The notes under the pieces are model-generated. The model saw nothing but the letters and a program-made list of their open reading frames with translations, was not told where the DNA came from and made no database searches. Shown here in pieces: positions 1 to 61,950 of a stretch of 64,000 bases of DNA (positions are counted from its first letter, which is position 1; each line of letters starts with the position of its first letter). The position numbers were made by a program, and so were the translations under genes. Origin of the DNA: Macrostomum lignano (taxonomy: Eukaryota). Where the stretch lies: positions 744,001 to 808,000 of the forward strand of contig NIVC01000110.1 of the NCBI GenBank assembly GCA_002269645.1. Direction: 5' to 3'.

Positions 1-357
1 AATTTGAACCGAGAGAGACCGAGGACACCGCAGGACGCACCCCCGGCAGACGATGAGCGAAGAGACGATCCGGCAGGCGAGCCCTGAGGTGCCCCGGCCG
101 AGAATTTGAGACCGAGAGAGACCGAGGACACCGCAGGACGCACCCCCGGCAGACGAAGCGATGAGGCCGACAGACGAAGCGATGAGGCCGACAGACGAAG
201 CGATGAGGCCGACAGACGAAGCGATGAGGCCGACAAACGAAGCGATGAGGCCGACAGACGGGATGACGAGATGACTGGTGGAGGGTTACGACTATGACGA
301 TGGCATGGCCTTTGCCAGCCTTACTGAATTGACTTAATTATTTTTCATTGGGCGCCA

Positions 358-677
358 TGTAGAAAAAATACTAAACTAAAGACTAGAGAGTTACTTGGAG
401 TTAAATTGAATCTAAGATAAGCCAGTAAGTGGGCGCAGGGCCCAAACAAGTATATTTATACCAGACATTAACTTAGGGGGTTTAAATTGCAGATAATAAA
501 GAGAGGGGGTGGAGTGCGCGACTGAGGAAAGAGGCGAGAACGGAGAGCCAATCAGAACGCAGCAAGGGAGAGAGAGAGATAAGAATAACAAGATTGAGCT
601 GGACAGAGAAGAGAGAAAACAGAGTAAACAGAGACAAGTGAAGGTGAACTAAAGAAATGACTAGGAAAGTCGCGACA
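358..677 (-). repeat. TRIM LTR copy (variant at 358-400)
   Basis: TG...CA termini, PBS and PPT adjacent, TATAAATA on - strand near 453-460; ~45 bp at the PBS-proximal end differ from the other two copies. Confidence 0.8.
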
Positions 678-1652
678 CTCCCCCAAAAAAATGGAACATT
701 TTTTGAATTTTCGAGTACCATTACCAATTGAAATTAATGAGTTAGAATTAGGTCGAATTAAATTGAAAAACACATTCACAATAAATGGTGTATAAAACGA
801 TTTGAAAAATACATAATGACTAAGAATTTGAATACAAAAACAGTAGAGCGAATGCAAAATATTTAGACCGAATTTTAAACTTAGATTTTTATTGAGTAGT
901 TTTTGAACCAATGAGAAGACTGAAAAGACTGAATATATCCGCCCTCCCCCTAAAAATTAATTTAATTTTTTAAATTGTGACTACATGGTGAAAGAAAAAA
1001 TTGAATGACGAATTAACGAGGCGATCTGGCAGGCGATGAGCGAAGAGACGATCCGGCAGGCGATGAGCGAAGAGACGATCCGGCAGGCGATGAGCAAAGA
1101 GACGATCCGGCAGGCGATGAGCAAAGAGACGATCCGGCAGGCGAGCCCCGAGGCGCCCCGGCCGAGAATTTGAACCGAGAGAGACCGAGGACACCGCAGG
1201 ACGCACCCCCGGCAGACGACGAGCGAAGAGACGATCCGGAAGGCGAGCGAAGAGATGATCCGGCAGGCGAGCGAAGAGACGATCCGGCAGGCGAGCCCCG
1301 CGGCGCCCCGGCAGAGAATCTGAACCGAGAGAGACCGAGGACACCGCAGGACGCACCCCCGGCAGACGATGAGCGAAGAGACGATCCGGCAGGCGAGCCC
1401 TGAGGTGCCCCGGCCGAGAATTTGAGACCGAGAGAGACCGAGGACACCGCAGGACGCACCCCCGGCAGACGAAGCGATGAGGCCGACAGACGAAGCGATG
1501 AGGCCGACAGACGAAGCGATGAGGCCGACAAACGAAGCGATGAGGCCGACAGACGAAGCGATGAGAAGACTGGTGGAGGGCTACGACTATGACGATGGCA
1601 TGGCCTTTGCCAGCCTTACTGAATTGACTTAATTATTTTACATTGGGCGCCA

Positions 1653-1973
1653 TGTAGAGAAAACTAACGATTGAATTATGAGATATTTAATTGGAGTTAA
1701 ATTGAATCTAAGATAAGCCAGTAAGTGGGCGCAGGGCCCAAACAAGTATATTTATACCAGACATTAACTTAGGGGGTTTAAATTGCAGATAATAAAGAGA
1801 GGGGGTGGAGTGCGCGACTGAGGAAAGAGGCGAGAACGGAGAGCCAATCAGAACGCAGCAAGGGAGAGAGAGAGATAAGAATAACAAGATTGAGCTGGAC
1901 AGAGAAGAGAGAAAACAGAGTAAACAGAGACAAGTGAAGGTGAACTAAAGAAATGACTAGGAAAGTCGCGACA
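1653..1973 (-). repeat. TRIM LTR copy
   Basis: 321 bp, shared between two internal domains, PBS and PPT adjacent. Confidence 0.8.
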
Positions 1974-2950
1974 CTCCCCCCAAAAAAATGGAACATTTTT
2001 TGAATTTTCGAGTACCATTACCAATTGAAATTAATGAGTTAGAATTAGGTCGAATTAAATTGAAAAACACATTCACAATAAATGGTGTATAAAACGATTT
2101 GAAAAATACATAATGACTAAGAATTTGAATACAAAAACAGTAGAGCGAATGCAAAATATTTAGACCGAATTTTAAACTTAGATTTTTATTGAGTAGTTTT
2201 TGAACCAATGAGAAGACTGAAAAGACTGAATATATCCGCCCTCCCCCCTAAAAATTAATTTAATTTTTTAAATTGTGACTACATGGTGAAAGAAAAAATT
2301 GAATGACGAATTAACGAGGCGATCTGGCAGACGATGAGCGAAGAGACGATCTGGCAGGCGATGAGCGAAGAGACGATCCGGCAGGCGATGAGCAAAGAGA
2401 CGATCCGGCAGGCGATGAGCAAAGAGACGATCCGGCAGGCGAGCCCCGAGGCGCCCCGGCCGAGAATTTGAACCGAGAGAGACCGAGGACACCGCAGGAC
2501 GCACCCCCGGCAGACGACGAGCGAAGAGACGATCCGGAAGGCGAGCGAAGAGATGATCCGGCAGGCGAGCGAAGAGACGATCCGGCAGGCGAGCCCCGCG
2601 GCGCCCCGGCAGAGAATCTGAACCGAGAGAGACCGAGGACACCGCAGGACGCACCCCCGGCAGACGATGAGCGAAGAGACGATCCGGCAGGCGAGCCCTG
2701 AGGTGCCCCGGCCGAGAATTTGAGACCGAGAGAGACCGAGGACACCGCAGGACGCACCCCCGGCAGACGAAGCGATGAGGCCGACAGACGAAGCGATGAG
2801 GCCGACAGACGAAGCGATGAGGCCGACAAACGAAGCGATGAGGCCGACAGACGAAGCGATGAGAAGACTGGTGGAGGGCTACGACTATGACGATGGCATG
2901 GCCTTTGCCAGCCTTACTGAATTGACTTAATTATTTTACATTGGGCGCCA

Positions 2951-3271
2951 TGTAGAGAAAACTAACGATTGAATTATGAGATATTTAATTGGAGTTAAAT
3001 TGAATCTAAGATAAGCCAGTAAGTGGGCGCAGGGCCCAAACAAGTATATTTATACCAGACATTAACTTAGGGGGTTTAAATTGCAGATAATAAAGAGAGG
3101 GGGTGGAGTGCGCGACTGAGGAAAGAGGCGAGAACGGAGAGCCAATCAGAACGCAGCAAGGGAGAGAGAGAGATAAGAATAACAAGATTGAGCTGGACAG
3201 AGAAGAGAGAAAACAGAGTAAACAGAGACAAGTGAAGGTGAACTAAAGAAATGACTAGGAAAGTCGCGACA
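2951..3271 (-). repeat. TRIM 5' LTR (array terminus)
   Basis: 321 bp, appears identical to 1653-1973; homology stops at ...GTCGCGACA 3271. Confidence 0.8.
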
Positions 3272-3930
3272 AGGGGAGAGGGTGTGAGGGTGTGAGAGTG
3301 TGAGGGAGAGAGGGTGTTAGGGGAGAGGGTGTTAAAGGAAGAGGGTGTGAAGGGGAGAGAGGGAGGAAAGGAAAGGAGAGGAAAGGATCAGAGGGGGAGA
3401 GGGTGTGAGATGGAGAGGTTGTGAGGGGGAGAGGGTGTGAGGGTGTGAGTTGGAGAGGGTGTGAGCAGGAGAGGGTATGAGGGAGAGAGGGTGTGAGGGG
3501 GAGAGGGTGTTAGGGGAGAGGGTGTGAGGGTGTGAGAGTGTGAGGGGGAGAGAGTGTTAGGGGAGAGGGTGTGAGGGTGTGAGAGTGTGAGGGGGAGAGG
3601 GTGTTAGGGGAGAGGATGTAAAGGGAAGAGAGGATGTGAGGGAGAGAGGGTGTTAAAGGAAGAGGGTGTGAAGGGAGAGAGGGTATGCGGGAGAGAGGGT
3701 GTTAGGGGAGAGGGTGTGAAGGGGAGAGGGTGTGAGGGAGAGAGGGTGTGATGGTGATGGGGAGAGGGTGTGAGGGAGAGAGGGTGTGATGGTGATGGGG
3801 AGAGGGTGTGAGGGAGAGAGGGTGTGATGGTGATGGGGAGAGGGTATGCGGGAGAGAGGGTGTTAGGGGAGAGGGTGTGAAGGGGAGAGGGTGTGAGGGA
3901 GAGAGGGTGTGATGGTGATGGAGAGAGGGT
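3272..3930. repeat. Degenerate G/A-rich simple repeat (GGAGAGGGTGTGA-like)
   Basis: Visible imperfect tandem repetition. Confidence 0.9.
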
Positions 3931-4032
3931 GTGAGGAAAGTATCAGAGGTCAGGCAGAGTGGGAGGGATTGAAGGCCACAGAGCCCATACAACATCAGCT
4001 GGTGAACCAGTCGCCCCCCAATCTCCACCCAG

Positions 4033-4314
4033 ATGCCGTCGGGCCCTTTCGCCGGCCGCTCGGTGACCAACGAAGACTTCGCCTCGGCCAGCAGCTCGGT
4101 GCCGCAGCAGCCCCGGCAGGCACCGGTGCGGCACCGCGGCGAGCTGACCGGCACAGCTTCGCTAGGCGGTCACGCGGCCGGAGCGGATGCGAGCGGCGGA
4201 TGGGCAACATCTACGAGTCAGGACGCCTTCACGGCCAAGCAGAGAGAAGGGCCGCCGCCAAGGCGCAGGCAGCAGCAGCAGCCGCAGGAGCCGCAGGAGC
4301 AGTTTCTGCAGTAG
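4033..4314 (+). CDS. Probable terminal coding exon of a + strand gene (low-complexity, Q/P-rich C-terminus)
   Basis: Acceptor CCCCCAATCTCCACCCAG at 4032, resembling other acceptors in the window; GC-rich island with GC3-biased codons in the frame MPSGPFAGRSVTNEDF...QEQFLQ*. Upstream exons would lie outside the window; frame not certain. Confidence 0.45.
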   Translation: MPSGPFAGRSVTNEDFASASSSVPQQPRQAPVRHRGELTGTASLGGHAAGADASGGWATSTSQDAFTAKQREGPPPRRRQQQQPQEPQEQFLQ

Positions 4315-4892
4315 CGAATCTACGTACTTTTAGGCTGAGGTTTTGGATAAGCAAAATTGCCTTCCACTGACAATTCTCCATCTGCAGCGGCGCCCTTAAA
4401 ATTATTAATCACCTTTGAATTTTAAGCTTTTGAAAATGAGGTTTTTATAGAATGAATATCAAATGTGCTGGCGCCTCTGGTGCTGGCGCCATTCCTAAGA
4501 ATCCTGTGACCATGCCTCTAGTTGTGTCTTGCACTGCGGGGACCCATCTCAGTCTCTATATTCGACAGCGTGTATAATTTAATAATTTACACGAGACAAC
4601 AAAATTAAATGTCCCATTTTAATCCCCATTTTTGTTTGGTCAGCCGCTGGCTTGTTGAAGGATTGTCAGTAGTAAAAGCAATGTTTATCTTTGCAGGACT
4701 AGATTGGGTGATGTCTAACTAGGAACTAGGCTCTTTTGCAACGATTTTATTTTGTTTGTTTGCTTGCATGTTGATTTCCTTTAATAATCGGTACACCGCT
4801 CACTACCAATCAGTGATGCCCGAAATGATAAATTTTAATTTTAATGCACAGTACGAGTATAGGCTCGAACTATCGATTCGATTCGAAAGCGA

Positions 4893-11725: not shown

Positions 11726-11964
11726 ACCACCGCGGAATGCAGAAGGGGGGTTGGCGTGGGATGAAGCCTGGAGTGTGCTGCCTAGGCACTACTGGCTACT
11801 GATGAGTAGCATGCAATGAAATTTACTGCTGGGAAATAAAAAAACATAAAAATGATATGGATTTCTAAAAAGCAGAGCACGGTTATCTTTTATTTGTTGC
11901 AATTTTCAATCACCGGATACAAAAATTAGAAATTACACCGACTACTTTTATAAATTGGGGAAAT

Positions 11965-12650
11965 TAGTGAGATGGGGAGATTAGGGAGATGACGAGTTTA
12001 GGGAGATGGGGAGATTAAGGAGATGGGGAGTTTAGGGAGATAGGGATTTTAGGGAGATGGGGAGTTTAGGGAGATGGGGAGTTTAGGGAGATGGGGAGTT
12101 TAGGGAGATGGGGAGATTAGGGAAATGGGGAGATTAGGGAGATGGGGAGTTTAGGGAGATGGGGAGTTTAGGGAGATGGGGAGATGAGGAAAATGGGGAG
12201 ATTAGGAAAATGGGGAGATTATGGAGATGGTGAGATTAGGGAGATGGGGAGATTAGGGAGATGGGGAGTTTAGGGAGATGGGGAGTTTAGGAAGATGGGG
12301 AGATGAGGAAAATGGGGAGATTAGGAAAATGGGGAGATTATGGAGATGGTGAGATTAGGGAGATGGGGAGATTAGGGAGATGGGGAGATTAGGAAAATGG
12401 GGAGATTAGGGAGATGGCAAGTTTAGGGAGATAGGGATTTTAGGGAGATGGGGAGATTAGGGGGATGGGGAGATTAGGAAAATGGGGAGATTAGGGAGAT
12501 GGTGAGATTAGGGAGATGGGGAGATTAGGGAGATGAGGAAAATGGGGAGATTAGGAAAATGGGGAGATTAGGGAGATGGTGAGATTAGGGAGATGGGGAG
12601 ATTAGGAAGATAAGTGATATGGGAGGATTGGGGAGATTTGGGGAGATTGG
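11965..12650. repeat. 17-bp G-rich minisatellite (GGGAGATGGGGAGATTA)
   Basis: ~40 units between the sulfotransferase stop and the TMPPE start. Confidence 0.95.
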
Positions 12651-12708
12651 AGAAAAATAAAGGAGAGAAGGTGCAGAAGGGATCAGTCAAAGTCAGGTGG
12701 GGAACTGG

Positions 12709-15099
12709 TCAAGAAGGTCCCTCATCAGCCGCAGCCGGACTCTTTTCTCCCGTCTCCCCCAGCCGCAGGCCGCAGCCAGCTCGCAGCGGCTCCAGCAGCT
12801 CCGCATCGAACCGGGCCGCCTCATCAGCCGACATCAGACTCCGCCAGCCGCCAGCCCGGCCAGCCCGATAAAATCCCATTCTGGGATCGTGAGCGCCGTA
12901 GCGCCGGTACCAGGAGTAGCTGGTTGTTGGCCTCAGGCGCATCCGATGAAAGTTGCAGAAGTCCACGATCTGCGCAGGGTGTGGGGTGGGTAGTCTCTGA
13001 GTCACTGCTCACCTTCACTCAGTCATTCCTCACCTCCACTCAGTCATTCCTCACCTCCACTCAGTCATTCCTCACCTCCACTCAGTCATTCCTCACCTCC
13101 ACTCAGTCATTCCTCACCTCCACTCAGTCATTCCTCACCTTCACTCAGTCATTCCTCACCTCCACTTAGTCATTCCTCACCTCCACTCAGTCATTCCTCA
13201 CCTCCACTCAGTCATTCCTCACCTCCACTCAGTCATTCCTCACCTCCACTTAGTCATTCCTCACCTCCACTCAGTCATTCCTCACCTCCACTCAGTCATT
13301 CCTCACCTCCACTTAGTCATTCCTCACCTTCACGCAGGCCTCTCGCAGGTTGTGTGACAATTTTAAGAAACTAAGAAGCCCAATTATCACAAATTCACAT
13401 AAACTACCCGCTCACTCACTTCATTCACCCGCCGCTGACTGGGCTCAGTGACTCCCAGAAACCGAGCAATTCTGATCACACAGCCTGCTGTATCCGCCAT
13501 CAACTCCTCATACGTGAGAAACATCACCCGATCAGGCCTGTCGCAGCTGACACGCCAGAACGCCTCCACGTGGTCAAGCCAAGGACCATAGGGCAGCGGT
13601 CGGTCTCCGCTACTATCCAAGAATCGATCAATGAAATCCCCTGACCAATCTCCCGTGTAGCCAATCAGTGGGCTGAGCATGCGAAGGAAATGATAATAGG
13701 AGATTGACGTGTCTTTCGGACAACGGGCCAGGTAGATTACCTGCGGATCGGGTTTGTTTGCGAGCTGCTTGACTGCTAATGGGAAGCTGCTCTCTAAGTC
13801 ATGTATTCTCTCAGAGTGTGCAACCTTATCTCTTTGATTCTCTTCTCTCGTCTCAACTCTGCATCTCTCTTCCTAACCCAACCTCTCAACCCTGCATCTC
13901 CTTTCTTTAATCCAACTTCTCAACCCTGCATCTCCTTTCTTTAATCCAACTTCTCAACCCTGCATCTCCTTTCTTTAATCCAACTTCTCAACCCTGCATC
14001 TCCTTTCTTTAACCCAACTTCTCAACCCTGCATCTCTCTTCCTAACCCAACCTCTCAACCCAGTATCTCCTTTCTTTAATCCAACTTCTCAACCCTGCAT
14101 CTCCTTTCTTTAATCCAACTTCTCAACCCTGCATCTCCTTTCTTTAATCCAACTTCTCAACCCTGCATCTCCCTTCCTAAACTAACCTCTCAACCCTGCA
14201 TCTCCCTTCCTAAACTAACCTCTCAACCCTGCATCTCCCTTTCTTAACCAACCCAACCTCTCAACCCTGCATCTCCCTTTCTTAACCAACCCTTATCTCA
14301 ACCCTGCATCTTATTTCCCTAACCATAGCCTTACCATAACCCTGCAGCAGATCTCAAACACTAGTCATAGTCCTACCTACATCCAGTAACCCCCTAGGTC
14401 TATCTTTCTTTTCAAGGATTTCCAATTATTCTATCAAAGAAAGTTTCATAAACTTTTTAAAGCCATTAAACTCACTTTAGCACCTGAACCCTTGCTTAAC
14501 TTTTCGTCCACCACAGATCTAGGCAGCAAGCCCCAGGGCAGATGCGATTTAATAAATCGCCTAGAAGTGTTCATAGGCCAACGCTTGATAGTGGCGAGTC
14601 CCGGGTAAGGATATTCCAAATATGGAAACCGGTCCTCAATGCTGACAGTCTCAGCCAGTTTCGAATCAAAGTCGGTGGCCAACATAAACACGAGCTCCTG
14701 GAGCCAAGTGGTGCCAGCTTTGGGAAACGATACGACAAAGATGTCACCAGAACGAACTGGCATTGAAGCCACGCCGTCAAGAGCTCGATAAACATCGGTT
14801 GGTAACCAACAAAAATAGCTGCTCTCTGCATCTGACTTGGCTTTTGATTGATCAACCTCAGCTTTAACGAACTGTACAGACTCGAATTTTTTATCACGAA
14901 CCAGCTTGGACTTCCATTGCTGATGACCTCGCCAACAGGTGAAACCCACTGCACCTAAGGTGGCCGCTGCCGCACTAGCTGCTATTAGTGCAGCTGCACT
15001 TTTACTGCCAGCTCCGGATTCATTGGTTTGTCTGGACTGGGACAGAACTGTGCGACCAGTTGATAACAGACGGTGCTGGGTATGGCGTAAGACTTGCAG
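12709..15099 (-). CDS. Cytosolic-type (PAPS-dependent) sulfotransferase with N-terminal extension; 5' end incomplete
   Basis: Exons 15099-14476, 13740-13420, 12969-12709 (all phase 0, GT-AG). 5'-PSB motif SFPKAGTTW, catalytic His (IKSHLP), 3'-PB motif IYLARCPKDTSISYY, C-terminal FYRAGRAGGW. Frame stays open upstream to an acceptor at 15100; initiating exon not located. Confidence 0.88.
13005..13330. repeat. 21-bp intronic minisatellite (CACTCAGTCATTCCTCACCTC)
   Basis: ~15 units in a sulfotransferase intron. Confidence 0.95.
13855..14320. repeat. 34-bp pyrimidine-rich intronic minisatellite
   Basis: CAACCCTGCATCTCCTTTCTTTAATCCAACTTCT units. Confidence 0.9.
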
Positions 15100-16450: not shown

Positions 16451-16516
16451 ACAAAATGATTTAGAATATTTAGTTTAAAAAACACTGATATTTAATTAAA
16501 TAACTGCTCTTATAAT

Positions 16517-17226
16517 TGTAGTAGGGGGTTTAGTTTCAAGCAGTTTTGCTAAGGCGTTTGCCATTCGTCGGGATGAATTATTTTAGTAGCATGAATTCGA
16601 GAATAAGCAGTTTTGCTTTTACGCTACTATTAGTAGTTCACCTTCGGGAAAATATCTGAAGCTATGGGAATTCGAGTCTTAGCGGGTTTCTCTATTAGTA
16701 AAAGGCTGTTTGGCCTCGGGAAAAGCATCCTGTTCAGGACCGTCCATTGGACAACATTTGTAAGAGATCTAAGTCTCAAATAAGCCAGACTAAGGGAGTC
16801 TCCCCTTTATAAAATAAAAGAATATATATAAGAAAGTATAAAAGGTAAGATCGGGGTAAAATAGGGAGGCTAAGAGGAGTCTACCGCTTAGTCAAAACGG
16901 AGTCTACCGAGAATAGGAATTAGTACAGTCAGTTAGATAGAAGTAAGGGAAAGGAACCAGGAGTCTACCGGTTCTAATAACATAGTAATAATAGTGCTTA
17001 AATCTTTGCATATTTGGTTCAATAATATCATTTTCTTTTGTTTGTTTATTCCAATAATCTTCCATGAAGTCGACTCTTGTCTCACTTATTTTAATCTAAA
17101 ACTATTATTATAAGGGACATTAGTCTGGTGGCAGCAACCTACCAAATTAGAGTACATAATAACAGAAGTAATAATAGAAAACCAGAATAAACCAGTAGCC
17201 TAAACCGCAGGTACCACGCGTGTCCA
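16517..17226 (+). repeat. 5' LTR of gypsy element
   Basis: 710 bp, near-identical to 24488-25197. Confidence 0.97.
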
Positions 17227-17228
17227 AT

Positions 17229-17247
17229 TGGTGGCAGCGGTGGGATT
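17229..17247 (+). promoter_or_regulatory. Primer-binding site, tRNA-Leu type
   Basis: TGGTGGCAGCGGTGGGATT is complementary to the metazoan tRNA-Leu(AAG/UAG) 3' end ...AATCCCACCGCTGCCACCA (recalled tRNA sequence). Confidence 0.85.
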
Positions 17248-17649
17248 AGTAAACCCGAGAAACGCAAAAAAGTTAAGACTGGTGCAAACTAGCAAAAAAA
17301 TTAGTAAAATATATAACCTGCAAAATAAAACGTTTCGGAGAGTCAGAATCAAGTACGAAGGTAATTAATCTAAAATTACTAAAACTAATACGATAATCCT
17401 AATCTTAGGATTAACGGATTAAGATCGAATTAACGCTTCTAGTAGCTAATAGTGTCAAAATTAATAGCAAGGTCATAATTGACCCAGTTAAAAGTGAAGA
17501 GATCACGCAGTCTAGCAGTTCTGTTCACAAAAAATTAGAAATAACCAATTAAACTAGCTAGGTAGATCAGTGACTCAGGAGTCTCCCAGTTTCACTGAAT
17601 TCAATTAATAGTAAAGTATCAGAAGCGATAATTCGTAATCAGGAATCTA

Positions 17650-18660
17650 ATGGACGCTAATGACGTAGTAGAAGCTTTGGCTGAAGGCATTAGAGACAGG
17701 CTAGACATTAGAAAGCACATTAGGATCCAAAAGTACACGCCTAATCAAGATATAGACGTATGGATTCAGGCTTTTGAGCAAAGGTGTATCGCAGATGAGA
17801 TACCTGCAGCCGATTGGAAAAATGAACTACTATCTAATCTAGATGTCCAATCAGCATTTGCTATTGTGACAAGGCTGAATTTAGATCCTAATCTACCGTA
17901 TGCTGAATTCAAGGATAGGCTCATCGAACGATTCACGCATGCGGGTAGTGCCCAAGAAGCTAGGGAAGAATTCCGCAGCAGATATCAATCTAAGACAGAG
18001 AGCTCTGACGACTATGCGGAGGAGCTGACAGAGTTAGCCTATAGGGCATTTCCCCACCTAACTAATGACCAAAGACAGGAAGAAGTGGTGGAACAATTTA
18101 TTAGAGGTGTTAGGATAACCCCAGAGGCTAGGGAAAAGCTACTGCTAGCACAGGCGAACACACTCCAAGAGACACGTCGAGTCTTGCGACGTATCGAAAT
18201 GGCGTATACCATGTCTCGCCGAGGGAGAGATCCAGCTCAGTGCAAGGCAACTGGAGGAGATGAGGCTGAGAGTAGCTTGAGGGAGTTAGTCCGCAAGCAA
18301 GGTGAGACACTAGAAAGCCAGCAGAGGGTGCTCCAGGAGTTGCTTCGACACCAGCAGAGTGCTGAGCAGAAGGCTAGGCAGAAGCCGTACCAAGGCCAGC
18401 AACAGGGCCAAGGTCAGAAGCAGCCAGTAAAGTGCTTCAAGTGTGGGAAAAGTGGTCACATAGCTAAGCATTGCCAGCAGCAGCAGAATCAGCCGCAGTT
18501 TCCGCAGCAGCAGTTTCCACAACCACCACAGTTTATTCCGTACCAGCCGCAGTACCCGCCGCCGCAGTTCCCGCAGCAGCAGTTCCCGCAGCAGTACCAG
18601 AATAAGAATCAGGGAAACGGAGTAGCCGGAAGCGTAGGAGGCAACGCTTTCCAGAAGTAG
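17650..18660 (+). CDS. gag: Gypsy Gag (336 aa)
   Basis: Retrotransposon capsid-like region (RYQSKTESSDDYAEEL), CCHC knuckle CFKCGKSGHIAKHC, Q/P-rich tail. Confidence 0.93.
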   Translation: MDANDVVEALAEGIRDRLDIRKHIRIQKYTPNQDIDVWIQAFEQRCIADEIPAADWKNELLSNLDVQSAFAIVTRLNLDPNLPYAEFKDRLIERFTHAGSAQEAREEFRSRYQSKTESSDDYAEELTELAYRAFPHLTNDQRQEEVVEQFIRGVRITPEAREKLLLAQANTLQETRRVLRRIEMAYTMSRRGRDPAQCKATGGDEAESSLRELVRKQGETLESQQRVLQELLRHQQSAEQKARQKPYQGQQQGQGQKQPVKCFKCGKSGHIAKHCQQQQNQPQFPQQQFPQPPQFIPYQPQYPPPQFPQQQFPQQYQNKNQGNGVAGSVGGNAFQK

Positions 18661-21600
18661 ACAGCCAGCAGTCTGTAGCCTCGCAACCTGTAAATAGCAG
18701 CGATAGTTTTTCTGTAAATAGTGAATTGAATTCTTTGTATAACAGTATGCATGCGCAACCATTTAATCAATCATTTAATCAACCAAATATTTATTCTCAG
18801 CACTTTTCACACGCACCACAGCAACAACCTTGTTCTAGTAAGCAGCAAATTAAACCACAAAATTTAAGCAAACCAACTAAGAAGCGAAATTACGATCCGT
18901 ATATTACTGGCAGCATTCTAAATAAGGAGGTAGTTTATCTATTAGACACTGGCAGCAATAGGAACATTCTAGGACGTGAAACCTGGAAACACTTGTTCAC
19001 TGGCAAGAATAGTCACTTAATTAAGCAGTGGAACAATAGAATCGTGTCATTCACGGAAGAGCCGATTCCAATTAAAGGTTCCGTAGTTATTAAGGCGACA
19101 TTCGGTGATTTTGAAGAAGAAATAGAGTTTCTTTTATGTGACGCAGAGGTAGACAATGTAATAGGCGTGACGTTTGTCCAACAATATTGTAATGCTATTG
19201 ACTTCGAAGCAGGAATGCTAACTATGAAGCAGGGAACTAGAATTCCACTTCGTTCAACCAGAGCTAAGCCTCAGGTTAAGAGAATCTATGTTGCAGAAAA
19301 GACGACAGTTCCAGCTAATAGTTCAGGATTAGTCAAGGTTAGATTAGCCACAGGTAGTGAATCCAATTTCGGAGTGCCGTCAGTTGTTGAGCCACTCAGA
19401 TCAGGATTGAAGACTAGAGCAGAGAAGGTAACTGTAGTACCAAGCTTAGTAACTCTAAGGCAAGGAGAAGCGTATCTAGAAGTGATTAACACCAGCTCAC
19501 AGGAAGCTAGAGTGCCAGCAGCAGCACTAGTAGGAATGGCTAAGCCACTTTTAGCTAGTGAATTAAACTATCTTAAAGAACAACCAGAGAAAGAGCAGTT
19601 ATGCCAGAATAAGAACACGCAGTTTTGCGAAAACATCAGACAGGTTCAAGACAAGTCAGAAGACTGGATTAGTGAGATTAACATAGGAACTGAACTGACT
19701 CAGGAGCAGAGACAGAAGGTGATCGAAGTCGTCCAGGAGCATTCAGCAGCTTTCTCGCAGCACGAGTTAGACTTAGGCAGAACGCATTTAGTCACACATG
19801 AGATTATCTTGAAGGACAACAACCCAGTTCAGATACCAGCTAGAAAGATTCCACCTCATTGGATCAAGGAGGTAGATGAGCAGTTAGATCTCATGTTGGC
19901 TAGAGGCATCATTAGGCCTAGTTACTCGCAGTACTCGACTCCATTAGTCATAGTACCTAAGAAAGATGGTTCGCTGAGATTAGTTAACGACTATCGAGCA
20001 CTAAACAACAAATCGGAGTACTTTCCGTATCCAATAACTAATATTAATGAAACATTCTCATGTCTCCATGGGCCAGTCAATTTTCTACGTTAGATCTATT
20101 TTCGGGATATTATCAGATAGCTCTTAGGGAAGAAGATAAGTGCAAGACTAGTTTTCCAACTTTACATCGAGGCTCGTTTGAGTACGAAGTTTTGCCAATG
20201 GGATTGCAAGGAGCTCCAGGAACTTTCCAAAGGTGCATGAACTTAGTTCTTAAGGACATTGCACAGAAGTTCGCCATAGCTTACTTAGACGATGTAATAG
20301 TTTATAGTACAGACTTTGAATCTCACTTAGAACACCTGAAAGAAGTGCTCAAAAGACTAATCCAAGCTAATATGAAACTAAAGGCGAAGAAATGTCACCT
20401 TTTCAAATCGGAACTGCAATATCTAGGACACGTCATAGGCAAATCAGGAATTAAAAGAGATGCGTCAAAGTTAGAAACGATTAGGAACTGGCCAAAACCT
20501 AAATCGTGACAGAGCTTCGAAGTTTTCTCGGACTCTGTAACTATTATCGAAAGTTTGTTAGAGATTTCGCAGAGGTAGCAGCACCACTCTGTGAGCTAAC
20601 GAAGAAGAACATCAAGTGTATCCAGGACAAATGGACCAGGATTCATGATGAATGCTTCGAGCTGTTGAAGGAACGGATGTGTTCCGAAGAAGTGCTTGCT
20701 TACCCAGAGTTTAATACGGACCCCCAAGTTTATTTTGTGTTAGACACTGATGCATCAGATGTCAGAATTGGGGCGGTCTTAAATCAAGTACAGAGCGACG
20801 GAGTTGAGAGACCGATCGCGTATTATAGTCGAAAAATGAGGCAGTCAGAAAGTAGATATCCGATTACGAGGAAGGAGCTTCTAGCGATTGTTGACTCGCT
20901 GAAGTACTTCAGGTTTTACCTCGTAGGGAAACGTTTTAAGGTGCGCACTGATCACAATGCCCTAACCTGGTTGCTTCGCCAGACCGAACAGACAGGCATT
21001 TTAGGTCGTTGGATCGAGAGACTTAGTGAATTTGATTTTGAGATTGAGCATAGAAGTGGCCCTAAGCATGTGAATGCTGATGCTCTATCCAGGATCCCGG
21101 ATCCTCAACAGGATGAGTCATCCCCATATGCCAGGTCGCTTAGCTGTAGGGCAACTGTGAACACAGACCCAGCATCAGCTGTTACTGTGAGCTCAGGCAA
21201 TTCCGCGCAAGCCGAAACCTGTAGTCTGCACAGTGGAGTTACGTCATGCTGTTCGCCGCAGAATATGGCGCCGAACCGACACAATACTCCGAGTTTTAGT
21301 AGCAGGTTGCTAAGCAAAAGGCAAGAACAGGAGCCTAAGGAAAGGCACCCGCTTGTTTGCAATGCACTGCTGAGTGATTACCTTCGTAGCCCTGTGCGTC
21401 GCGAAAAATTGGTCGCAGCTCAGCTAGCCGACCCCGCACTAAGCTATGTCAGGAATCTGATTGAATCTGACTTGCCGAAACCGAACTTTCAAGAAAGACT
21501 AGAATTGTCTCACGAGATTAGAAATCTGCTAGGCTATTATGAACTCTTCAGGATAGAAGACGGTGTTCTCCGAATAGACTTAAATTTAGGGCGGACCGAA

Positions 21601-23054
21601 TCTAAAGTGGTGTTGCCCAAGTCTTTGGATGGTGAAGTTTTTCACGAATTCCACGATTCACCGTTAGCAGGTCATTAGGAAGAGACAAAACTTATCAGCG
21701 AATTAAAGAAAGATTTTGGAGAGTAGGATTAGCTACAGCAGTCGAAAAGTACGTCGCCAAGTGCAAATCCTGTTTAGAAAGTAAATCAAGAAAGCGATGC
21801 AAGGCACCAGTGCAGAATTTTCCTATTGTCGAGCCATTCTCACGCCTTCACATTGATTTGATAGGTCCGATCAGTCAGACTAGCAAATCTGGTAACAAAT
21901 ATGTCTTGTCAGTTATTGACAGCACTAGCAAATTTCCGTTTGCGTTTGCAATTAAAAATCAGAAGGCTAAGACAGTAATTAAAATTCTGCAGGAGCGAGT
22001 TTTCGCCGACTTTGGAATACCTCAGTGGATTCACACGGATCAGGGAACACAGTTTACAGGGAGAGCATTTAGGAAATTTCTAGACCTCTATGGGATTAGG
22101 CACACTAGGACAACAAGCTATCATCCACAAAGCAATGGGCTAGTAGAGAATTTAAACAAACAAATTAAGTCAATTCTTACCTGTTTGCTCGAGAAAGAAC
22201 ATGCGAACTGGGATGTTCTATTGCCCGGTTGTGTAACCGCATTGCGCACCAGTACGCATACAGCCACAGGTTTCAGCCCGCATTATCTTGTGTTTGGAAG
22301 AGAGGCCCGGATGCCGAGTGACAATGTGTTCCAGCAGCCAAAGGCGTTCGCCGATCTGCCTGCTTACGTTCAAGAGCACTTAACTCACCTGCAAGAGGGG
22401 CAAGAACTCGCCAAACAGCGGCTCAAATTAATACAACGTAAGCGTGAGCAGCACTATTCTAACAAACCTAAACAACCAGACTTACCTATAGGGAGCTTAG
22501 TTTTCATTAACAACCCAGTCATCACACAGACAGAAGCCAACAAGTTCCACAGGAAGAGAAGAGCAGTCTACGAGGTCATAGAACAGTTATCAGAAGTAGT
22601 TTACAGGATTAGATTATTAAACAAAAGTACTAAGGCTAGAAAAGAGGAATTAGTCATGCATAGGGATAATTTACTACCCGTACCAACAGCCGATTACGTT
22701 AGTGAGGAAGAAAAGCCAGAAAGCAGTTGTGCCAGGCGACCGAAACTTCGAGGAAATGTACCGCTTAATCCGATGTACGAAGCAGCCGACAGTGAGAGTG
22801 AACATGAAGATGAAGTGCAGTTTGTGCCAGTGCAAATTCAAAATAATGTTCCAGTGCCAGTGCAGGTTATGCCAGTGCAGGATATACCAGTGCAAGATAT
22901 GCCAGTACAAAATAACGAACAGCCAGTAGTCGAAAATAGACCAGTTAGAAATAGACGGGAGCCGAGTAGATTAGCGATAGACCCAGGCCAGAAGAGCTAC
23001 GTACAGAGAGTAAAGGAGTTGTTTAACCCCTATCTACTCTTCCAGCTCGAATAG
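18606..23054 (+). CDS. pol: Gypsy Pol (protease-RT-RNase H-integrase), interrupted by three single-base deletions
   Basis: LLDTGS protease, YLDD RT, DTDASD RNase H, H-H-C-C zinc finger and IDLIGP...TDQGTQF...E integrase. Frame shifts near 20070, 20505 and 21675 join ORFs 18726-20093, 20060-20509, 20506-21678, 21810-23054. Confidence 0.93.
18612..18685 (+). promoter_or_regulatory. -1 programmed ribosomal frameshift signal (G GGA AAC + hairpin/pseudoknot)
   Basis: Slippery heptamer 18612-18618 in gag phase; pol frame (-1) is open from 18606; stem GGAAGCGT 18628-18635 / ACGCTTTCC 18644-18652. Confidence 0.8.
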
Positions 23055-23058
23055 CATT

Positions 23059-23885
23059 ATGGCTGATGCCCCGGAGCGCATTTATCCTATTAAAAAGATT
23101 TATTCCGGAAAAAGGAGACATGATTCAGACGAAAATGAACCCCGAGAGTGCGCTCAGTAAGGGTGATAGAAACGGCTGACGAGCCCGAGAAACCCCATCC
23201 ACGGGAAGAACCGATTACGAAGGAAGAAGAAGGCGAAGGTAGATTAATAATAGATCTGGGAGGCGCAGATCTGGAAGCCGAGACAAGGAAGCAGGAAGAA
23301 GAGAGAAGAGAAGAGCACGATGAGTTTTTACGAATGTTGCTAGACGTTAGTCTGCCCGATATTGAAGAGGCCTTGAGCCCTGCCAATGAGGCACCAGTGG
23401 CAGAGGAACCACCAAGCAATGATGTCCAAGAGCATAAGCCGGCTCCGGTGGCGGATGAGCCTCCCTTGGATGTCGCCGGACTATTTCGAGACGACGTACC
23501 ACCGCCGAGCAACCAAGACGCAGCGACCGAACCTTCCGGCGCCAGTCCAAGGAAGTTCCGGAAGTGCACCAAGGCCCTGAAAAGGTGGTTGCTGCAAACC
23601 GGCAACACGGGCCGGTACGATCCGACAGTGCCAGCGGCCTGCACACGATTTCTCGCTAAGGCTACGGCGGCGCAGCGCATCCAGAGCTTAGAGGTGGCCT
23701 GCACCTATGCGTTGCAGCATGCAGAGGAACGGGCGAAAGGACCAATATCACCGTACCAGGTGAGTGAACATCTACGCGACCTGGCAGAATTATTTGACCC
23801 GGAAGGCAAGAAAACGCCAGCAACCGGCCTGCTTTACCAGTGTGCGCAGAGGGCGCCAACCTGCCGACCCCTAGGGAATCTTTGA
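23059..23885 (+). CDS. Accessory ORF3 of the gypsy element (acidic/Pro-rich, unknown function, not Env-like)
   Basis: 245-codon open frame 23148-23885 inside the LTRs, just after the pol stop. ATG at 23059 joins it if two more single-base deletions (~23110, ~23147) are assumed. Confidence 0.65.
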
Positions 23886-24487
23886 GTTGAAAATTTAATA
23901 ACCCAGGGATTAACGCTTCCATTGCTGCTAATTTTTTTTGTTGTTATTATTACACAACCACACAGCTTTAACTTTTCTTTTTCTATGTTGTCTGCATTTT
24001 ACACAGTGCCATAGTGCCATTTTTTTCTTTTCTTTTTCTCAAATTATTGCACCGCTTCTGGCCTTATATATATCTTTACATATCGATAATATTCAGGAAG
24101 AAACCTATATGGTCATTGCCTATTTCATTAATCCCATTATGCTCAATTATTACTGTTCAATGCTCACATACTATTGCTCAACTAATATTGTATGGCTTAA
24201 TTATTGTCGTTTACTTTCATTAATCATGTACTCGTACTGTTTATTACTTTTGCTGATAGTATGCTATTATTATTACCTATACCGTATATTACTAATTAAT
24301 CATACTATGTTCCATACTATGCTATGCTACCACTACTCAGTTATTATTATTGCTTAATCATGCTCATTATATTGCTTATATTTAGTCCATGCATGCCACT
24401 ATTAATACTGTCTGAATTACTTGAAATAAACCCGACAATAACTAAATATGCAAAGGGGTTTGCACATTTTTTTTAGTGGGGGGTAAG

Positions 24488-25197
24488 TGTAGTAGGGGGT
24501 TTAGTTTCAAGCAGTTTTGCTAAGGCGTTTGCCATTCGTCGGGATGAATTATTTTAGTAGCATGAATTCGAGAATAAGCAGTTTTGCTTTTACGCTACTA
24601 TTAGTAGTTCACCTTCGGGAAAATATCTGAAGCTATGGGAATTCGAGTCTTAGTGGGTTTCTCTATTAGTAAAAGGCTGTTTGGCCTCGGGAAAAGCATC
24701 CTGTTCAGGACCGTCCATTGGACAACATTTGTAAGAGATCTAAGTCTCAAATAAGCCAGACTAAGGGAGTCTCCCCTTTATAAAATAAAAGAATATATAT
24801 AAGAAAGTATAAAAGGTAAGATCGGGGTAAAATAGGGAGGCTAAGAGGAGTCTACCGCTTAGTCAAAACGGAGTCTACCGAGAATAGGAATTAGTACAGT
24901 CAGTTAGATAGAAGTAAGGGAAAGGAACCAGGAGTCTACCGGTTCTAATAACATAGTAATAATAGTGCTTAAATCTTTGCATATTTGGTTCAATAATATC
25001 ATTTTCTTTTGTTTGTTTATTCCAATAATCTTCCATGAAGTCGACTCTTGTCTCACTTATTTTAATCTAAAACTATTATTATAAGGGACATTAGTCTGGT
25101 GGCAGCAACCTACCAAATTAGAGTACATAATAACAGAAGTAATAATAGAAAACCAGAATAAACCAGTAGCCTAAACCGCAGGTACCACGCGTGTCCA
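24488..25197 (+). repeat. 3' LTR of gypsy element
   Basis: 710 bp, preceded by PPT, followed by TSD. Confidence 0.97.
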
Positions 25198-51590: not shown

Positions 51591-54500
51591 TGACATACGC
51601 TCGTGCAATAGTCTATGGCCGTTGCGCCTCCCTCATCCCTCCCTAATATAAAAGTGTCCTAGCTTCATAATCTTGTTACAAGCCCCGCTAGCATTAATGT
51701 GGTCCTAAAGCCAAATAAACAAGCAAAGCAAGATACGAGCTTCGTTATTCATCAAGCACTAGAGTTGCCATCAGAGCATCACAATGGCGTCGCAAGCACT
51801 TGGACACATCGAACTTTCAGAACCTGAGCGCGCCCTGACGTGGCTAACAGCATTCCGTGCGCTCGCTAGAGCCAAGAAATGGAAAGATGAAGGCACCAAC
51901 AGAGAAATTGCAGATAACTTTCTGGCACTATGCGGATTGCCAGCACTTGAAAAGATAACATTTCTGGTGGCCCCAAAGAAGATTGACGAATTGGAGTTTT
52001 CTGCAATCGAGGCCGCCATTCAAAGTTACCTTCAACCAAAGTCGCGCATAACCATTGCCGAGCGAACTCGCTTCTACACCACCCGACGAGTCTCTTCCGG
52101 ATTACCTCTCGCGCCTAAGAAAGGGCGCCCAACATTGCAAATTCGATTCGCTGAAAGAGACAGAAAGCCCAGAAGAGGTCATGATTCAATTGGCGTTAGT
52201 CGCTGGCATGCACTGTCCCACAACACAGCAAAAAGTTCTAGAAGCTATGCAGATCAAGGAGCTGTCGGTCGAGGAAATCGTAGATTTTGTTGCTCAGATC
52301 AAGCAAGTGAAAGAGTTCGTGTCCAAACAAGCCTCCACACCGTTCACGACCTCCCCACCAAAGGAAACTGTTCCGGAGATTCACCATGGCTCTTTGGCTA
52401 CAAAGAACAACTTTACCACTCGCAAGATTGGACCACGCACGGGACAGTGTGATTACTGCGGTCAAGACCATGTTGCTGGAAAGTGCCCAGCGTTTGGAAA
52501 AACCTGCAGCAAATGCTCAAAACCAAACCACTTTGCATCGGTATGTCGATCCTCCCGACCACGCCAGCTCCACAACGTCGAGGAGCTCTCAAACGCAGAC
52601 CAGATACCACGTCCCTTCTTCACCTGGGGACGCGGACAGGATTCACGCTATCGACTCGACACTGGAAAACATAGTCATCAATGGTGCTCAAATCCCAATG
52701 CAAGTAGACACCGGTGCTGCGGTGAGCGTCATTTCAAGCACTCTCTGGGAGTCACTCCGCCGCCCGGCCCTCCAGAAGTGTCATCGCCGTCTTCAAGCCT
52801 ACGATGGCCACACGCTTAAAGTCCTCGGCAAGTTATCAACCGCCATTGAGCTTCGCGGCAAGTTTCACCCTGCTGAACTGATCGTTGTACAGGCCTCTAA
52901 GACATTCGGTCTGTTAGGCCGTGACTTATTGGACTCAGCGCAAGTCCACAGCACATGCTCCACTAGCACCGGTACGAGCTAACAGCGTGGATGCCCTACC
53001 CGTGATTAAAGGCATCAAGGCCAAAATGGAAACCATCGCTGGTGCCACTCCGAGGTTTTGCCGTGCGCGTCCCGTGCCTGTCGCCCTGGAATCCTCCATC
53101 AACGCTGAATTGGACAGGCTACAGCAGTTGGGCGTGATAGAACCAGTTGACGGCCCGGTGAGCAATGCTTCTCCTGTCGTCTGGGTCAAAAAGAAAGATG
53201 GAACCCTAAGGACGTGCGCTGACTACAGCGTTCACGTCAACGCAAATATCAAGTCAGAGGACTATCCCATCCCTAGCGTGGAGCACCTATTTTCCAAACT
53301 AAAAAACGCAAAGAAGTTCGCCAAAGTAGACCTGAGGTCGGCCTATTGGCAGATCGAATTGGACGAGGCTGCTCAGGATCTCTCAATAATTAACACATCC
53401 AAAGGATTATTTCGCGTGAAAAGACTTCAGATGGGGATGAAGAATGCATCTTTTATTTTTCAACGCGCGATGGAAAGTACTCTGTCGGACTTAAAGGGCG
53501 TTCTCATCTACCAAGACGACGTATTAGTTTTCGCCGAAAACAGTGATTCACTACAGAAAAGACTTCGTGCTGTGAAGACTAGGCTGGCAGAAAAGCATGT
53601 CACCATCAACGAAAGCAAATGCATCGAGGCGACTGATGAAATATCATTTCTGGGATTTAAAACTTCTGCTGCTGACATCCAACCCGATGATCGACTGGTT
53701 GAGAAAATCCGAAGTATCACACAACCCAAAGACAAGAAGGAGCTGGAACGATTCGTTGGTCTAATAAACTTCTTTGGAAGGCTAGTACCCAACTTCTCTG
53801 GAAAGATCCAGCCGCTAAATCGACTGCGCAGAGCGGACGTCAACTTTCAGTGGACAGCTGAGGGTGACCGAGCCTTCAGACAACTCAAGACGGAGATTGC
53901 CTCTCAACCCATAGTCCAGCCATACTCATTAGAAAAGGAACTCACTCTTACCACAGATGCCTCCAAGGGAGCGCTTGCAGGAGTTGTCACGCAAGATGGC
54001 CATCCTGTGATCTATTCTATATTTCTCGATGTCTTTCTACTGCCGAACAAAACTATTTAAACATAGAGCGAGAAGCCCTTGCCGTTTTTTGGGCAGTCAG
54101 CCGGCTGAAGCACTATTTACTGGGCCGCCACTTTACAATACAGACGGATCATAAGCCTCTCGAACAGCTCTTCGGCCAGTCTTGCGGGGTGCCGCTGAAC
54201 ACCTCCGCTCGCATTAGCAGATGGGCACTCGCGATGATGCACCTTGACTACACCATACGCTATATACCGGGAGAGAAGATTCCACATGCCGATGCGCTTT
54301 CTCGCCTACGCTTCACTGACTCATCTAACGATTCGGCGGAAGTCTGCGAAGCCATTGATTGCGTTGCCTTCGAGCCGTCTGTCATTCCCAGGAACCGGGT
54401 TGCCGCAGAGCTAGAGTTGGATGAGCTCATAAAAAAGTGATGCACCGAATTCACTCGGGAAACTGGGCTGGCTGTTCTCAGGCTGAGAAACCATTCCAGG

Positions 54501-61827: not shown

Positions 61828-61950
61828 GACTCTTGGTGGGCGCCCCTGACTCTTGGTGGGCGCCCCTGACTCTTGGTGGGCGCCCCTGTCTCTTGGTGGG
61901 CGCCCCTGTCTCTTGGTGGGCGCCCCTGTCTCTTAGTGGGCGCCCCTGTC
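61828..61950. repeat. 20-bp tandem repeat (GACTCTTGGTGGGCGCCCCT) x6
   Basis: Identical or near-identical units with no spacers. Confidence 0.9.

What the first reader, a model, noticed from the sequence alone, without database searches (positions are those of the whole stretch)
1..3271. Tandem-array TRIM-like retroelement with complete cis signals but no gag/pol
What looks like a 1.3-kb satellite resolves on the - strand into LTR(320)-PBS(tRNA-Lys-like TGGCGCCCAA)-~975 bp internal-PPT-LTR units that share LTRs. The array stops exactly at an LTR TG. Tandem-array TRIMs are established in plants and some animals; a flatworm-type example would be notable. It probably lies antisense in an intron of the + strand gene whose last exon is at 4033. 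Its PBS differs from those of both gypsy elements in the window, so the helper element is elsewhere (inference).
Basis: partly seen in the sequence, partly recalled or inferred. Interest (0 to 1): 0.72.

Follow-up and report, generated by a model that had tools for sequence, protein, structure and literature searches.

The report
Tandem non-coding LTR retroelement, Macrostomum lignano
The 1.3-kb repeat at the start of the window is a small, protein-less LTR retrotransposon of the flatworm Macrostomum lignano, copied head to tail so that neighbouring units share an LTR; this kind of element is already known in plants, bivalves and tapeworms, so it is a well-formed but ordinary example.

Summary
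Window 1-3271 is a head-to-tail array with a period of 1298 bp. On the - strand it reads LTR (320-321 bp, TG...CA), then a PBS (TGGCGCCCAA), then a ~975-bp non-coding internal domain, then a PPT (GGGGGGAG), then the next LTR. Three LTRs are visible, and the array ends exactly at the TG of the outermost one (3271). The window comes from Macrostomum lignano: part of it is 99.3% identical to contig NIVC01000561.1.

The main new evidence is a separate copy on another M. lignano contig (L003, in an intron of a Mab-21-like gene). It has the same 5' end (TGTCGCGAC), an LTR 87% identical to the window's, and the same CTCTACA|TGGCGCCCAA junction. A 5-nt word, AGTGG, lies next to both of its ends. The LTR is therefore a discrete, dispersed unit and not just a phase of a satellite.

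The internal domain has no gag/pol, no Pfam domain, no ribozyme and no 5S or tRNA module. Neither gypsy element in the window shares the termini or the PBS.

The best reading is a non-autonomous, TRIM-class LTR retrotransposon expanded by unequal LTR-LTR recombination. Tandem TRIMs are already reported in taeniid cestodes, so this is a new member of a known kind. The claim that it sits in an intron of a + strand gene is unsupported. I could not see the left end of the array, a target-site duplication (TSD) for the array, the host tRNA-Lys or a helper element.

The parts
2951..3271 (-). LTR3, the outermost (5'-most) LTR, 321 bp, TGTCGCGAC...TTTTCTCTACA. It carries an inverted CCAAT box (ATTGG, 3146-3142), TATAAATATA (3054-3045) and a block conserved in the dispersed copy, GTTTGGGCCCTGCGCCCA (3041-3024).
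   Evidence: It is 100% identical to LTR2, and the array ends at its TG (3271).
2938..2950 (-). Primer-binding site. TGGCGCCCAA (2950-2941) is complementary to the 3' end of tRNA-Lys(CTT), also called Lys1,2. The match extends to TGGCGCCCAATGT (13 bp) if one G.U pair is allowed.
   Evidence: The reference PBS for Lys1,2, TGGCGCCCAACGTGGGGC, is printed in PMC1084362.
2867..2937 (-). Unique leader between the PBS and the first minisatellite.
2311..2866 (-). GC-rich block of nested minisatellites (periods 21, 24, 27, 51/102 and 150 bp) that makes up most of the internal domain. It is open in all three - strand frames but has no protein-family match.
   Evidence: Its translation turns up inside the M. 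lignano gene model A0A1I8I777.
1982..2310 (-). AT-rich 3' part of the internal domain.
   Evidence: A six-frame protein search found no relative.
1974..1981 (-). Polypurine tract GGGGGGAG, abutting the TG of LTR2.
1653..1973 (-). LTR2, shared by units A and B, 321 bp.
1643..1652 (-). PBS of unit B.
685..1642 (-). Internal domain B. It differs from internal domain A at 4 positions in 977.
678..684 (-). Polypurine tract GGGGGAG, abutting LTR1.
358..677 (-). LTR1, 320 bp. It is identical to LTR2/3 except for its last ~45 nt (the presumed U5 end), which follow the variant seen in the dispersed L003 copy.
348..357 (-). PBS of unit C.
1..347 (-). Internal domain C, cut by the window edge. It is the most diverged unit, with one extra 21-bp repeat and 6 substitutions.
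3272..3936 (.). Flanking (GAGGGTGT)n minisatellite. It is not part of the element; it marks where the array stops.

Best explanation
[quoted passage not shown] It is TRIM-class by the <4 kb definition; a two-LTR monomer would be about 1.62 kb. It sits here as a tandem array in which successive units share an LTR: LTR-int-LTR-int-LTR-int...

Shown:
- The element has defined TG...CA LTR ends.
- A tRNA-Lys(CTT)-type PBS directly follows each LTR, and a G-rich polypurine tract directly precedes each LTR.
- It has no coding capacity.
- At least one other, diverged copy with the same termini and PBS lies elsewhere in the genome.

Inferred:
- The LTR promoter (CCAAT box, TATA box and a conserved block about 30 nt downstream) starts an RNA that runs through PBS, internal domain and PPT into the next LTR.
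- That RNA is packaged and reverse-transcribed in trans by the Gag-Pol of an autonomous Ty3/gypsy or BEL/Pao element that also primes with tRNA-Lys, and is then integrated by its integrase.
- After one such insertion, or two adjacent ones, unequal homologous recombination between LTRs on sister chromatids or homologues produced the LTR(n)-Int(n-1) array.
- The two 5'-most units (LTRs 100% identical, internal domains 99.6%) are the latest duplication. The third unit carries a different U5-PBS-leader variant, which points to recombination or gene conversion with another family member.
For: Array and boundaries: the period is 1298 bp and the array ends exactly at the LTR's TG. Three different sequences lie upstream of the same TGTCGCGAC start: the PPT inside the array, the minisatellite at 3272, and unrelated intron DNA in L003.

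PBS: CA|TGGCGCCCAA follows every LTR. The 10-mer is found only there in 64 kb, against 0.08 expected, and it equals the first 10 nt of the published tRNA-Lys1,2 PBS.

Dispersed copy: L003 12263-12616 (NIVC01001984.1) lies in the last intron of BOX15_Mlig010774g2. Its LTR is 87% identical to the window's. The CCAAT box, the TATA box and GTTTGGGCCCTGCGCCCA are conserved. The same LTR-PBS junction is followed by a 36-nt LTR 3' tail, and AGTGG lies next to both ends, with a chance of about 0.4%.

No coding capacity or embedded RNA module.

Precedent: the LTRx-I(x-1) pattern, and unequal crossing-over as its cause, are documented for TRIMs in plants, bivalves and taeniid cestodes.
Against: - No intact two-LTR monomer with a clean TSD was seen.
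- The left end of the array is outside the window, so the array's TSD cannot be checked.
- In L003 the second AGTGG is separated from the LTR end by an extra CA, so that TSD is not clean, and that copy is a deletion derivative.
- The PBS match is 10 nt (13 with one G.U pair). It was compared with the tRNA-Lys sequence of other animals, not with M. lignano tRNAs; none lie in the 133 kb I held.
- The PPT is short, 7-8 nt.
- No autonomous partner with matching termini or PBS was found.
- No transcription data were available.
- Only LTR3 and LTR2 carry a poly(A)-type ATTAAA, so the R/U5 borders are not established.
Confidence: 0.8

Rival explanations
1. A local remnant instead of a mobile family. 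An autonomous LTR retrotransposon at this locus lost its coding region, minisatellites grew in its place, and the remnant was then tandemly duplicated. The 'TRIM' with this internal domain would never have transposed as such, and only its LTR would be shared with dispersed copies of the parent family.
For: The only dispersed copy seen (L003) shares the LTR and PBS but none of the internal domain. The internal domain is mostly minisatellite, which this genome produces in abundance. The only trace of the internal domain elsewhere is one gene model (P0018). It is nearly identical to units A/B over about 85 aa and could be the same or a duplicated locus.
Against: Leader, PBS, PPT and LTR ends are all intact and adjoin each other correctly in three successive units. 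P0018 has 203 N-terminal residues and an annexin part that match nothing in the window, which suggests a second locus carrying the internal domain. Non-autonomous elements with unrelated internal domains under shared LTRs are the normal origin of TRIMs and LARDs.
Confidence: 0.13
2. An ordinary 1.3-kb satellite or segmental tandem duplication in which the PBS-, PPT- and TG/CA-like motifs are coincidental.
For: Only about 2.5 units are visible. The genome is rich in tandem repeats. The PBS match is only 10-13 nt and the PPT only 7-8 nt.
Against: The array ends exactly at the PPT|TG junction. A diverged copy in another contig starts at the same nucleotide and keeps the CA|PBS junction, but lies in unrelated flanks. 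The 10-mer is 0.08-fold expected by chance in the whole window.
Confidence: 0.04
3. An assembly artefact: a single two-LTR element, or a shorter array, inflated by mis-assembly of long reads.
For: LTR3 and LTR2 are 100% identical, internal domains A and B are 99.6% identical, and the array lies at the edge of the window.
Against: Unit C differs from A/B by a distinct U5 variant, an extra 21-bp repeat and several substitutions, which argues against a simple collapse or duplication. Even if the copy number were wrong, the nature of the element would not change.
Confidence: 0.03

Closest known systems
ta-TRIM of taeniid cestodes (Koziol et al. 2015, PMC4558846)
   Same: A flatworm host. A non-coding LTR element with TG..CA LTRs, a PBS directly after the 5' LTR and a PPT before the 3' LTR. 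Solo or partial LTR derivatives occur in introns and near genes. A few tandem copies are attributed to unequal crossing-over.
   Different: ta-TRIMs are much smaller (TRIMs are typically about 0.5-1 kb), have an 8-nt tRNA-Leu PBS, and have a candidate helper (lennie) and shown transcription. The element here has 320-bp LTRs, a 975-bp internal domain made mostly of minisatellites and a tRNA-Lys-type PBS. It shows no sequence relationship that I could test, has no known helper, and comes from a free-living macrostomorph.
Tandemly arranged TRIMs of plants and bivalves (Gao et al. 2016, PMC4717578; Wukong, PMC4528315; biv-TRIM, PMC6934838)
   Same: The TDRx_I(x-1) architecture with shared terminal repeats, differences between neighbouring terminal repeats explained by inter-element unequal recombination, and co-occurrence with dispersed partial copies.
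   Different: Those elements are under 1 kb. biv-TRIM lacks a recognisable PBS, whereas this element has a clear one.
LARDs and other non-autonomous LTR derivatives (Wicker et al. 2007 classification, as cited in PMC4558846)
   Same: LTRs, PBS and PPT are kept, the coding region is replaced by unrelated non-coding sequence, and mobilisation in trans is presumed.
   Different: LARDs are defined as >4 kb; this element is 1.6 kb.
Retrozymes and Cassandra
   Same: Small non-autonomous LTR elements that often occur in tandem.
   Different: Retrozymes carry hammerhead ribozymes and Cassandra carries a 5S rRNA module in the LTR. No Rfam family matches here, even at E<=5.

Membership tests
TRIM / non-autonomous LTR retrotransposon | Two or more direct terminal repeats with TG...CA ends | tested here: met
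   Three LTRs of 320-321 bp, TGTCGCGAC...TCTACA. The same ends occur in the L003 copy.
TRIM / non-autonomous LTR retrotransposon | PBS complementary to a host tRNA 3' end directly downstream of the 5' LTR | tested here: inconclusive
   TGGCGCCCAA abuts the CA in all four copies and equals the first 10 nt of the published Lys1,2 PBS. No M. lignano tRNA gene lay in the sequence available for comparison.
TRIM / non-autonomous LTR retrotransposon | Polypurine tract directly upstream of the 3' LTR | tested here: met
   GGGGGGAG|TG at 1981-1974 and GGGGGAG|TG at 684-678. The tract is short but similar in style to the PPTs of the two gypsy elements in the window.
TRIM / non-autonomous LTR retrotransposon | No gag/pol or other coding capacity | tested here: met
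   No Pfam hit in the internal ORFs. No homologues for the six-frame translations apart from one gene model that overlaps a copy.
TRIM / non-autonomous LTR retrotransposon | Small size (classical: <1 kb with 100-250-bp repeats; Wicker/Koziol: <4 kb) | tested here: inconclusive
   The monomer would be 321+977+321 = 1619 bp. That meets the <4 kb definition but not the classical one.
TRIM / non-autonomous LTR retrotransposon | Dispersed insertions flanked by 4-6-bp target-site duplications | tested here: inconclusive
   One dispersed copy was found in 133 kb (L003). AGTGG abuts its 5' end and recurs 2 nt beyond its 3' end (chance about 0.4%). The array's own TSD cannot be seen because its left end is outside the window.
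TRIM / non-autonomous LTR retrotransposon | An autonomous partner with the same LTR termini, PBS and TSD length | not testable with these tools
   Neither gypsy element in the window matches (termini TGTAGTAG.../TGACATAC...; PBSs TGGTGGCAGCGGTGGGATT and TGGCGTCGCAAGCAC). No DNA search of the M. lignano genome was available.
Tandemly arranged TRIM (LTRx-Int(x-1)) | Units share LTRs and the array begins and ends with a complete LTR | tested here: inconclusive
   LTRs are shared, and the right end is a complete LTR ending at its TG. The left end lies beyond window position 1.
Retrozyme | Hammerhead ribozyme in the repeats | tested here: not met
   No Rfam match in 1-4400 at E<=5, and none in the window at gathering score.
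Cassandra / small-RNA-derived LTR elements | 5S rRNA or tRNA-like module in the LTR | tested here: not met
Satellite DNA | Long homogeneous head-to-tail arrays as the main genomic form | not testable with these tools
   Only 2.5 units are visible here, and one non-array copy exists. Genome-wide array sizes are unknown.

The most novel reading that the evidence does not exclude
The family could be a retroelement caught in transition to a satellite. Its internal domain is itself built of nested minisatellites whose periods (21, 24, 27, 51/102, 150 bp) are all multiples of three. Its arrays might grow not only by crossing-over but also by read-through transcripts that are reverse-transcribed as multimers. 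Its LTR promoters might drive chimeric transcripts into host genes: the M. lignano 'annexin' gene model A0A1I8I777 begins with about 220 residues translated from the element's sense strand.
Probability: 0.12. Interest if true: 0.5.

Novelty: new member of a known kind. Interest (0 to 1): 0.3.

Why it matters
It adds a well-defined non-autonomous LTR family to the repeat catalogue of M. lignano, a regeneration and transgenesis model in which LTR elements make up about 21% of the genome and tandem repeats about 15% (PMC5730564). The published annotation filtered out unclassified LTRharvest candidates, so a non-coding element like this one may have been dropped or scored as tandem repeat.

It also extends TRIM-type elements and their tandem form from parasitic cestodes to a free-living, early-branching flatworm lineage. 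Its LTR carries what looks like a compact promoter, conserved between copies that are 87% identical, which may be useful or relevant for gene regulation. Conceptually, nothing here goes beyond what is known for TRIMs.

Tried and rejected
- A six-frame protein search of the LTR plus the AT-rich internal part, used as a proxy for a DNA search of public assemblies, found nothing.
- Exact-protein look-ups of element ORFs, gypsy gag ORFs and the ankyrin ORF, meant to pull more M. lignano contigs, found nothing on record.
- A scan of JGI metagenome contigs for a conserved 27-mer of the LTR gave 0 hits.
- Rfam was searched for hammerhead, 5S, tRNA or any other RNA family: no ribozyme, 5S or tRNA match. 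The only hit at E<=5 was a chance match (Afu_254, E=1.2) at 4250-4310, outside the array.
- tRNA scans of the window and three loci for a host tRNA-Lys found none.
- An empty-site search for the L003 insertion in paralogous loci failed. The flank 36 nt away belongs to another repeat family, and no empty site was available.
- The two gypsy elements in the window were considered as helpers and rejected, because their termini and PBSs differ.
- The 4033-4314 ORF as the last exon of a host gene has no supporting homologue or domain.
Full report
**Source organism.** The Mab-21-like ORF at 58826-60601 is 94% identical to BOX15_Mlig002049g3 of Macrostomum lignano, and all other hits are M. lignano proteins. 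Window 58874-63482 aligns at 99.3% to contig NIVC01000561.1 of assembly GCA_002269645.1. The window is therefore M. lignano, a free-living macrostomorph flatworm. Its genome is reported to be about 21% LTR retrotransposons and about 15% simple and tandem repeats (PMC5730564). The window fits that description. It carries more than 20 distinct minisatellite and microsatellite arrays and two Ty3/gypsy elements.

**The observation.** BLAST of one unit against the window gives a period of 1298 bp. Unit 1652-2949 matches 385-1651 at 99.4%, and its first 322 nt match 2950-3271 at 100%. Nothing similar occurs in 3272-64000. An nhmmer profile of the LTRs also finds only the three copies.

On the - strand the array reads:
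- LTR3, 3271->2951 (321 bp)
- PBS, 2950->2941
- internal domain A, down to 1982
- PPT GGGGGGAG, 1981->1974
- LTR2, 1973->1653
- PBS, 1652->1643
- internal domain B
- PPT GGGGGAG, 684->678
- LTR1, 677->358 (320 bp)
- PBS, 357->348
- internal domain C, 347->1, cut by the window edge

Each LTR begins TGTCGCGAC and ends (C)TCTACA, so the termini are TGT...ACA. The CA is followed with no spacer by TGGCGCCCAA. That 10-mer occurs only at these three sites in 64 kb on both strands, against 0.08 expected. It equals the first ten bases of the PBS for tRNA-Lys1,2 as printed in PMC1084362, TGGCGCCCAACGTGGGGC. The next three bases (TGT against CGT) would extend the RNA duplex to 13 bp with one G.U pair; this last point is inference. 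The array stops at 3271, which is exactly the T of the outermost LTR's TG. What follows is an unrelated (GAGGGTGT)n minisatellite, 3272-3936.

**Is the LTR a real, discrete unit?** The array end alone cannot answer this, because the LTR start was defined from it. To get more M. lignano DNA I fetched about 69 kb around three Mab-21-like paralogues.

One of these loci, L003 (NIVC01001984.1), contains a copy on its - strand at 12616->12263. It reads: unrelated DNA ...CCTATAGTGG | TGTCGCGACTTTCC... then a 317-bp LTR 87% identical to the window LTRs ...TTTTCTCTACA | TGGCGCCCAA | a 36-nt tail | CA | AGTGGTTACAG... The tail aligns to the last 32 nt of window LTR1 with 29 identities and four gap positions. 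This copy is thus a 5' LTR plus PBS plus the extreme 3' end of a 3' LTR, that is, an internally deleted element. It lies in the last intron (11950-13178) of BOX15_Mlig010774g2, antisense to the gene.

Three different upstream contexts now converge on the same first nucleotide of the LTR: the PPT inside the array, the minisatellite at 3272, and intron DNA in L003. The CA|PBS junction is also conserved in a copy that has diverged by 13%. AGTGG abuts the 5' end and recurs two bases after the 3' end. The chance of such a recurrence within offsets 0-3 is about 0.4%. This looks like a 5-bp target-site duplication, but the extra CA makes it unclean. No empty site could be recovered, because the flank 36 nt away belongs to another repeat family. 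Finding one extra copy in about 130 kb of sequence outside the array suggests hundreds to thousands of copies genome-wide, but that estimate is very rough.

**Anatomy of the LTR.** The alignment of window and L003 LTRs shows a well-conserved 5' two-thirds. It includes an inverted CCAAT box (CTGATTGGCTC, ATTGG at 3146-3142), TATAAATATA (3054-3045) and, ending 30 nt downstream of the start of the TATA box, an invariant GTTTGGGCCCTGCGCCCA (3041-3024). The last 45-70 nt are variable. This is the pattern expected for U3 with a promoter, a start site, and then R/U5; that function is inferred, not shown. LTR2 and LTR3 have an ATTAAA at about 2987, but LTR1 and the L003 LTR do not, so I do not assign a poly(A) site.

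**Internal domain.** On the - strand, in order:
- a 71-nt unique leader
- about 555 bp of nested GC-rich minisatellites, with periods of 21, 24, 27, 51/102 and 150 bp
- about 330 bp of AT-rich sequence
- the PPT

All three - strand frames are open across the minisatellites, simply because the units lack stop codons. There is no Pfam match. A six-frame search of the LTR plus the AT-rich part found nothing. A search with the minisatellite ORFs found a single protein, the UniProt model A0A1I8I777 'Annexin' of M. lignano (P0018). Its residues 204-426 are a translation of the element's sense strand from just after the leader to the end of the GC-rich block. Its first 203 residues and its annexin part match nothing in the window. 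It most likely marks another locus that carries the internal domain upstream of an annexin gene, but a mis-modelled or duplicated version of this same locus cannot be excluded, and no DNA was retrievable. Rfam finds no hammerhead, 5S, tRNA or other family, with sensitive settings on 1-4400 and at gathering scores on the whole window.

**History of the array.** LTR3 and LTR2 are identical. Internal domains A and B differ at 4 of 977 positions. Unit C differs more: it has one extra 21-bp repeat and six substitutions in 357 nt, and the last ~45 nt of LTR1 follow the L003-type variant. The divergent patch runs across U5, PBS and leader. This points to two steps. First, unequal recombination or gene conversion involved two different family members, which is the mechanism proposed for plant and bivalve tandem TRIMs with unlike terminal repeats. 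A very recent unequal LTR-LTR exchange then duplicated the 5'-most unit.

**Helper element.**
- Gypsy-1 (16513-25197) has 714-bp LTRs that are 99.7% identical, the TSD TAAT and the PBS TGGTGGCAGCGGTGGGATT. From memory, that PBS is the complement of a tRNA-Leu 3' end.
- Gypsy-2 (51591-55896) has LTRs of ~193 and ~204 bp, the TSD GTTAT and the PBS TGGCGTCGCAAGCAC.
- Both have LTR termini and PBSs unlike the array's.

**Claims that did not hold.** The ORF at 4033-4314 runs from ATG to a stop. It has no Pfam match and no homologue among M. lignano or other proteins. There is therefore no evidence that it is the last exon of a gene whose intron holds the array. [quoted passage not shown] Bivalve TRIMs form arrays up to TDR58_I57 (PMC6934838). 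I found no paper in the held library on non-autonomous LTR elements of Macrostomum.

**Verdict.** This is a tandemly arranged, non-coding LTR retrotransposon of M. lignano with intact cis signals, a tRNA-Lys-type PBS and at least one dispersed relative. It is a new member of a known kind. By size it sits between classical TRIMs and LARDs, and it is unusual mainly in having an internal domain built of minisatellites. Still open are the left end and TSD of the array, the host tRNA, the helper, the copy number and transcription.

Noticed in passing
window 16513-25197: A young Ty3/gypsy element on the + strand. Its 714-bp LTRs are 99.7% identical, and it has the 4-bp TSD TAAT, the PPT AGTGGGGGGTAAG and the 19-nt PBS TGGTGGCAGCGGTGGGATT (tRNA-Leu type, from memory). 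Separate ORFs carry gag with a zinc knuckle, RNase H and integrase. The 455-aa ORF 18726-20093, where protease and RT should lie, gave no Pfam match, so the pol region may be broken.
   Followed up: partly
window 51591-55896: A short (4.3 kb) gypsy-type element with LTRs of ~193 and ~204 bp that are 93.6% identical (the 3' LTR has an 11-nt insertion). It has the 5-bp TSD GTTAT, the PBS-like TGGCGTCGCAAGCAC one base after the LTR, and RT and integrase ORFs in separate frames. It is probably degenerate.
   Followed up: partly
window 4885-48954: At least 20 different minisatellite or microsatellite arrays lie in 45 kb. Periods are 4, 14, 17, 18, 19, 21, 22, 23, 24, 30, 34 and 37 bp, up to 126 copies each, and most have unrelated units. 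This extreme density of tandem repeats between the genes produces many spurious long ORFs.
   Followed up: no
window 56286-60601 versus L001 (NIVC01000561.1): The ankyrin-repeat and Mab-21-like ORFs are annotated as one fused 1020-aa protein in GenBank (BOX15_Mlig002049g3), and L001 holds three tandem paralogous copies. The window matches L001 at 99.3% downstream of 58874 but only 84-94% upstream. The window is therefore a different haplotype, duplicate or assembly of a tandemly duplicated gene cluster.
   Followed up: partly
P0018 (UniProt A0A1I8I777, M. lignano 'Annexin'): This gene model has about 220 residues translated from the sense strand of the element's minisatellite domain, fused upstream of a normal annexin. 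It is either an annotation artefact or an LTR-driven chimeric transcript like those reported for ta-TRIM solo LTRs.
   Followed up: partly
L003 12653-13178 and L001 173-402, 5820-5865, 6584-6670: Another dispersed repeat family, starting TTAGA(A/C)GCAGG..., lies 36 nt from the LTR copy in L003 and recurs at least three times in L001 at 87-93% identity. It was not identified.
   Followed up: no
window 1018-1565 and 2316-2863: All minisatellite periods inside the element's internal domain (21, 24, 27, 51/102, 150 bp) are multiples of three, unlike most arrays elsewhere in the window. This may hint that the block derives from a repetitive coding sequence. No protein relative was found.
   Followed up: partly
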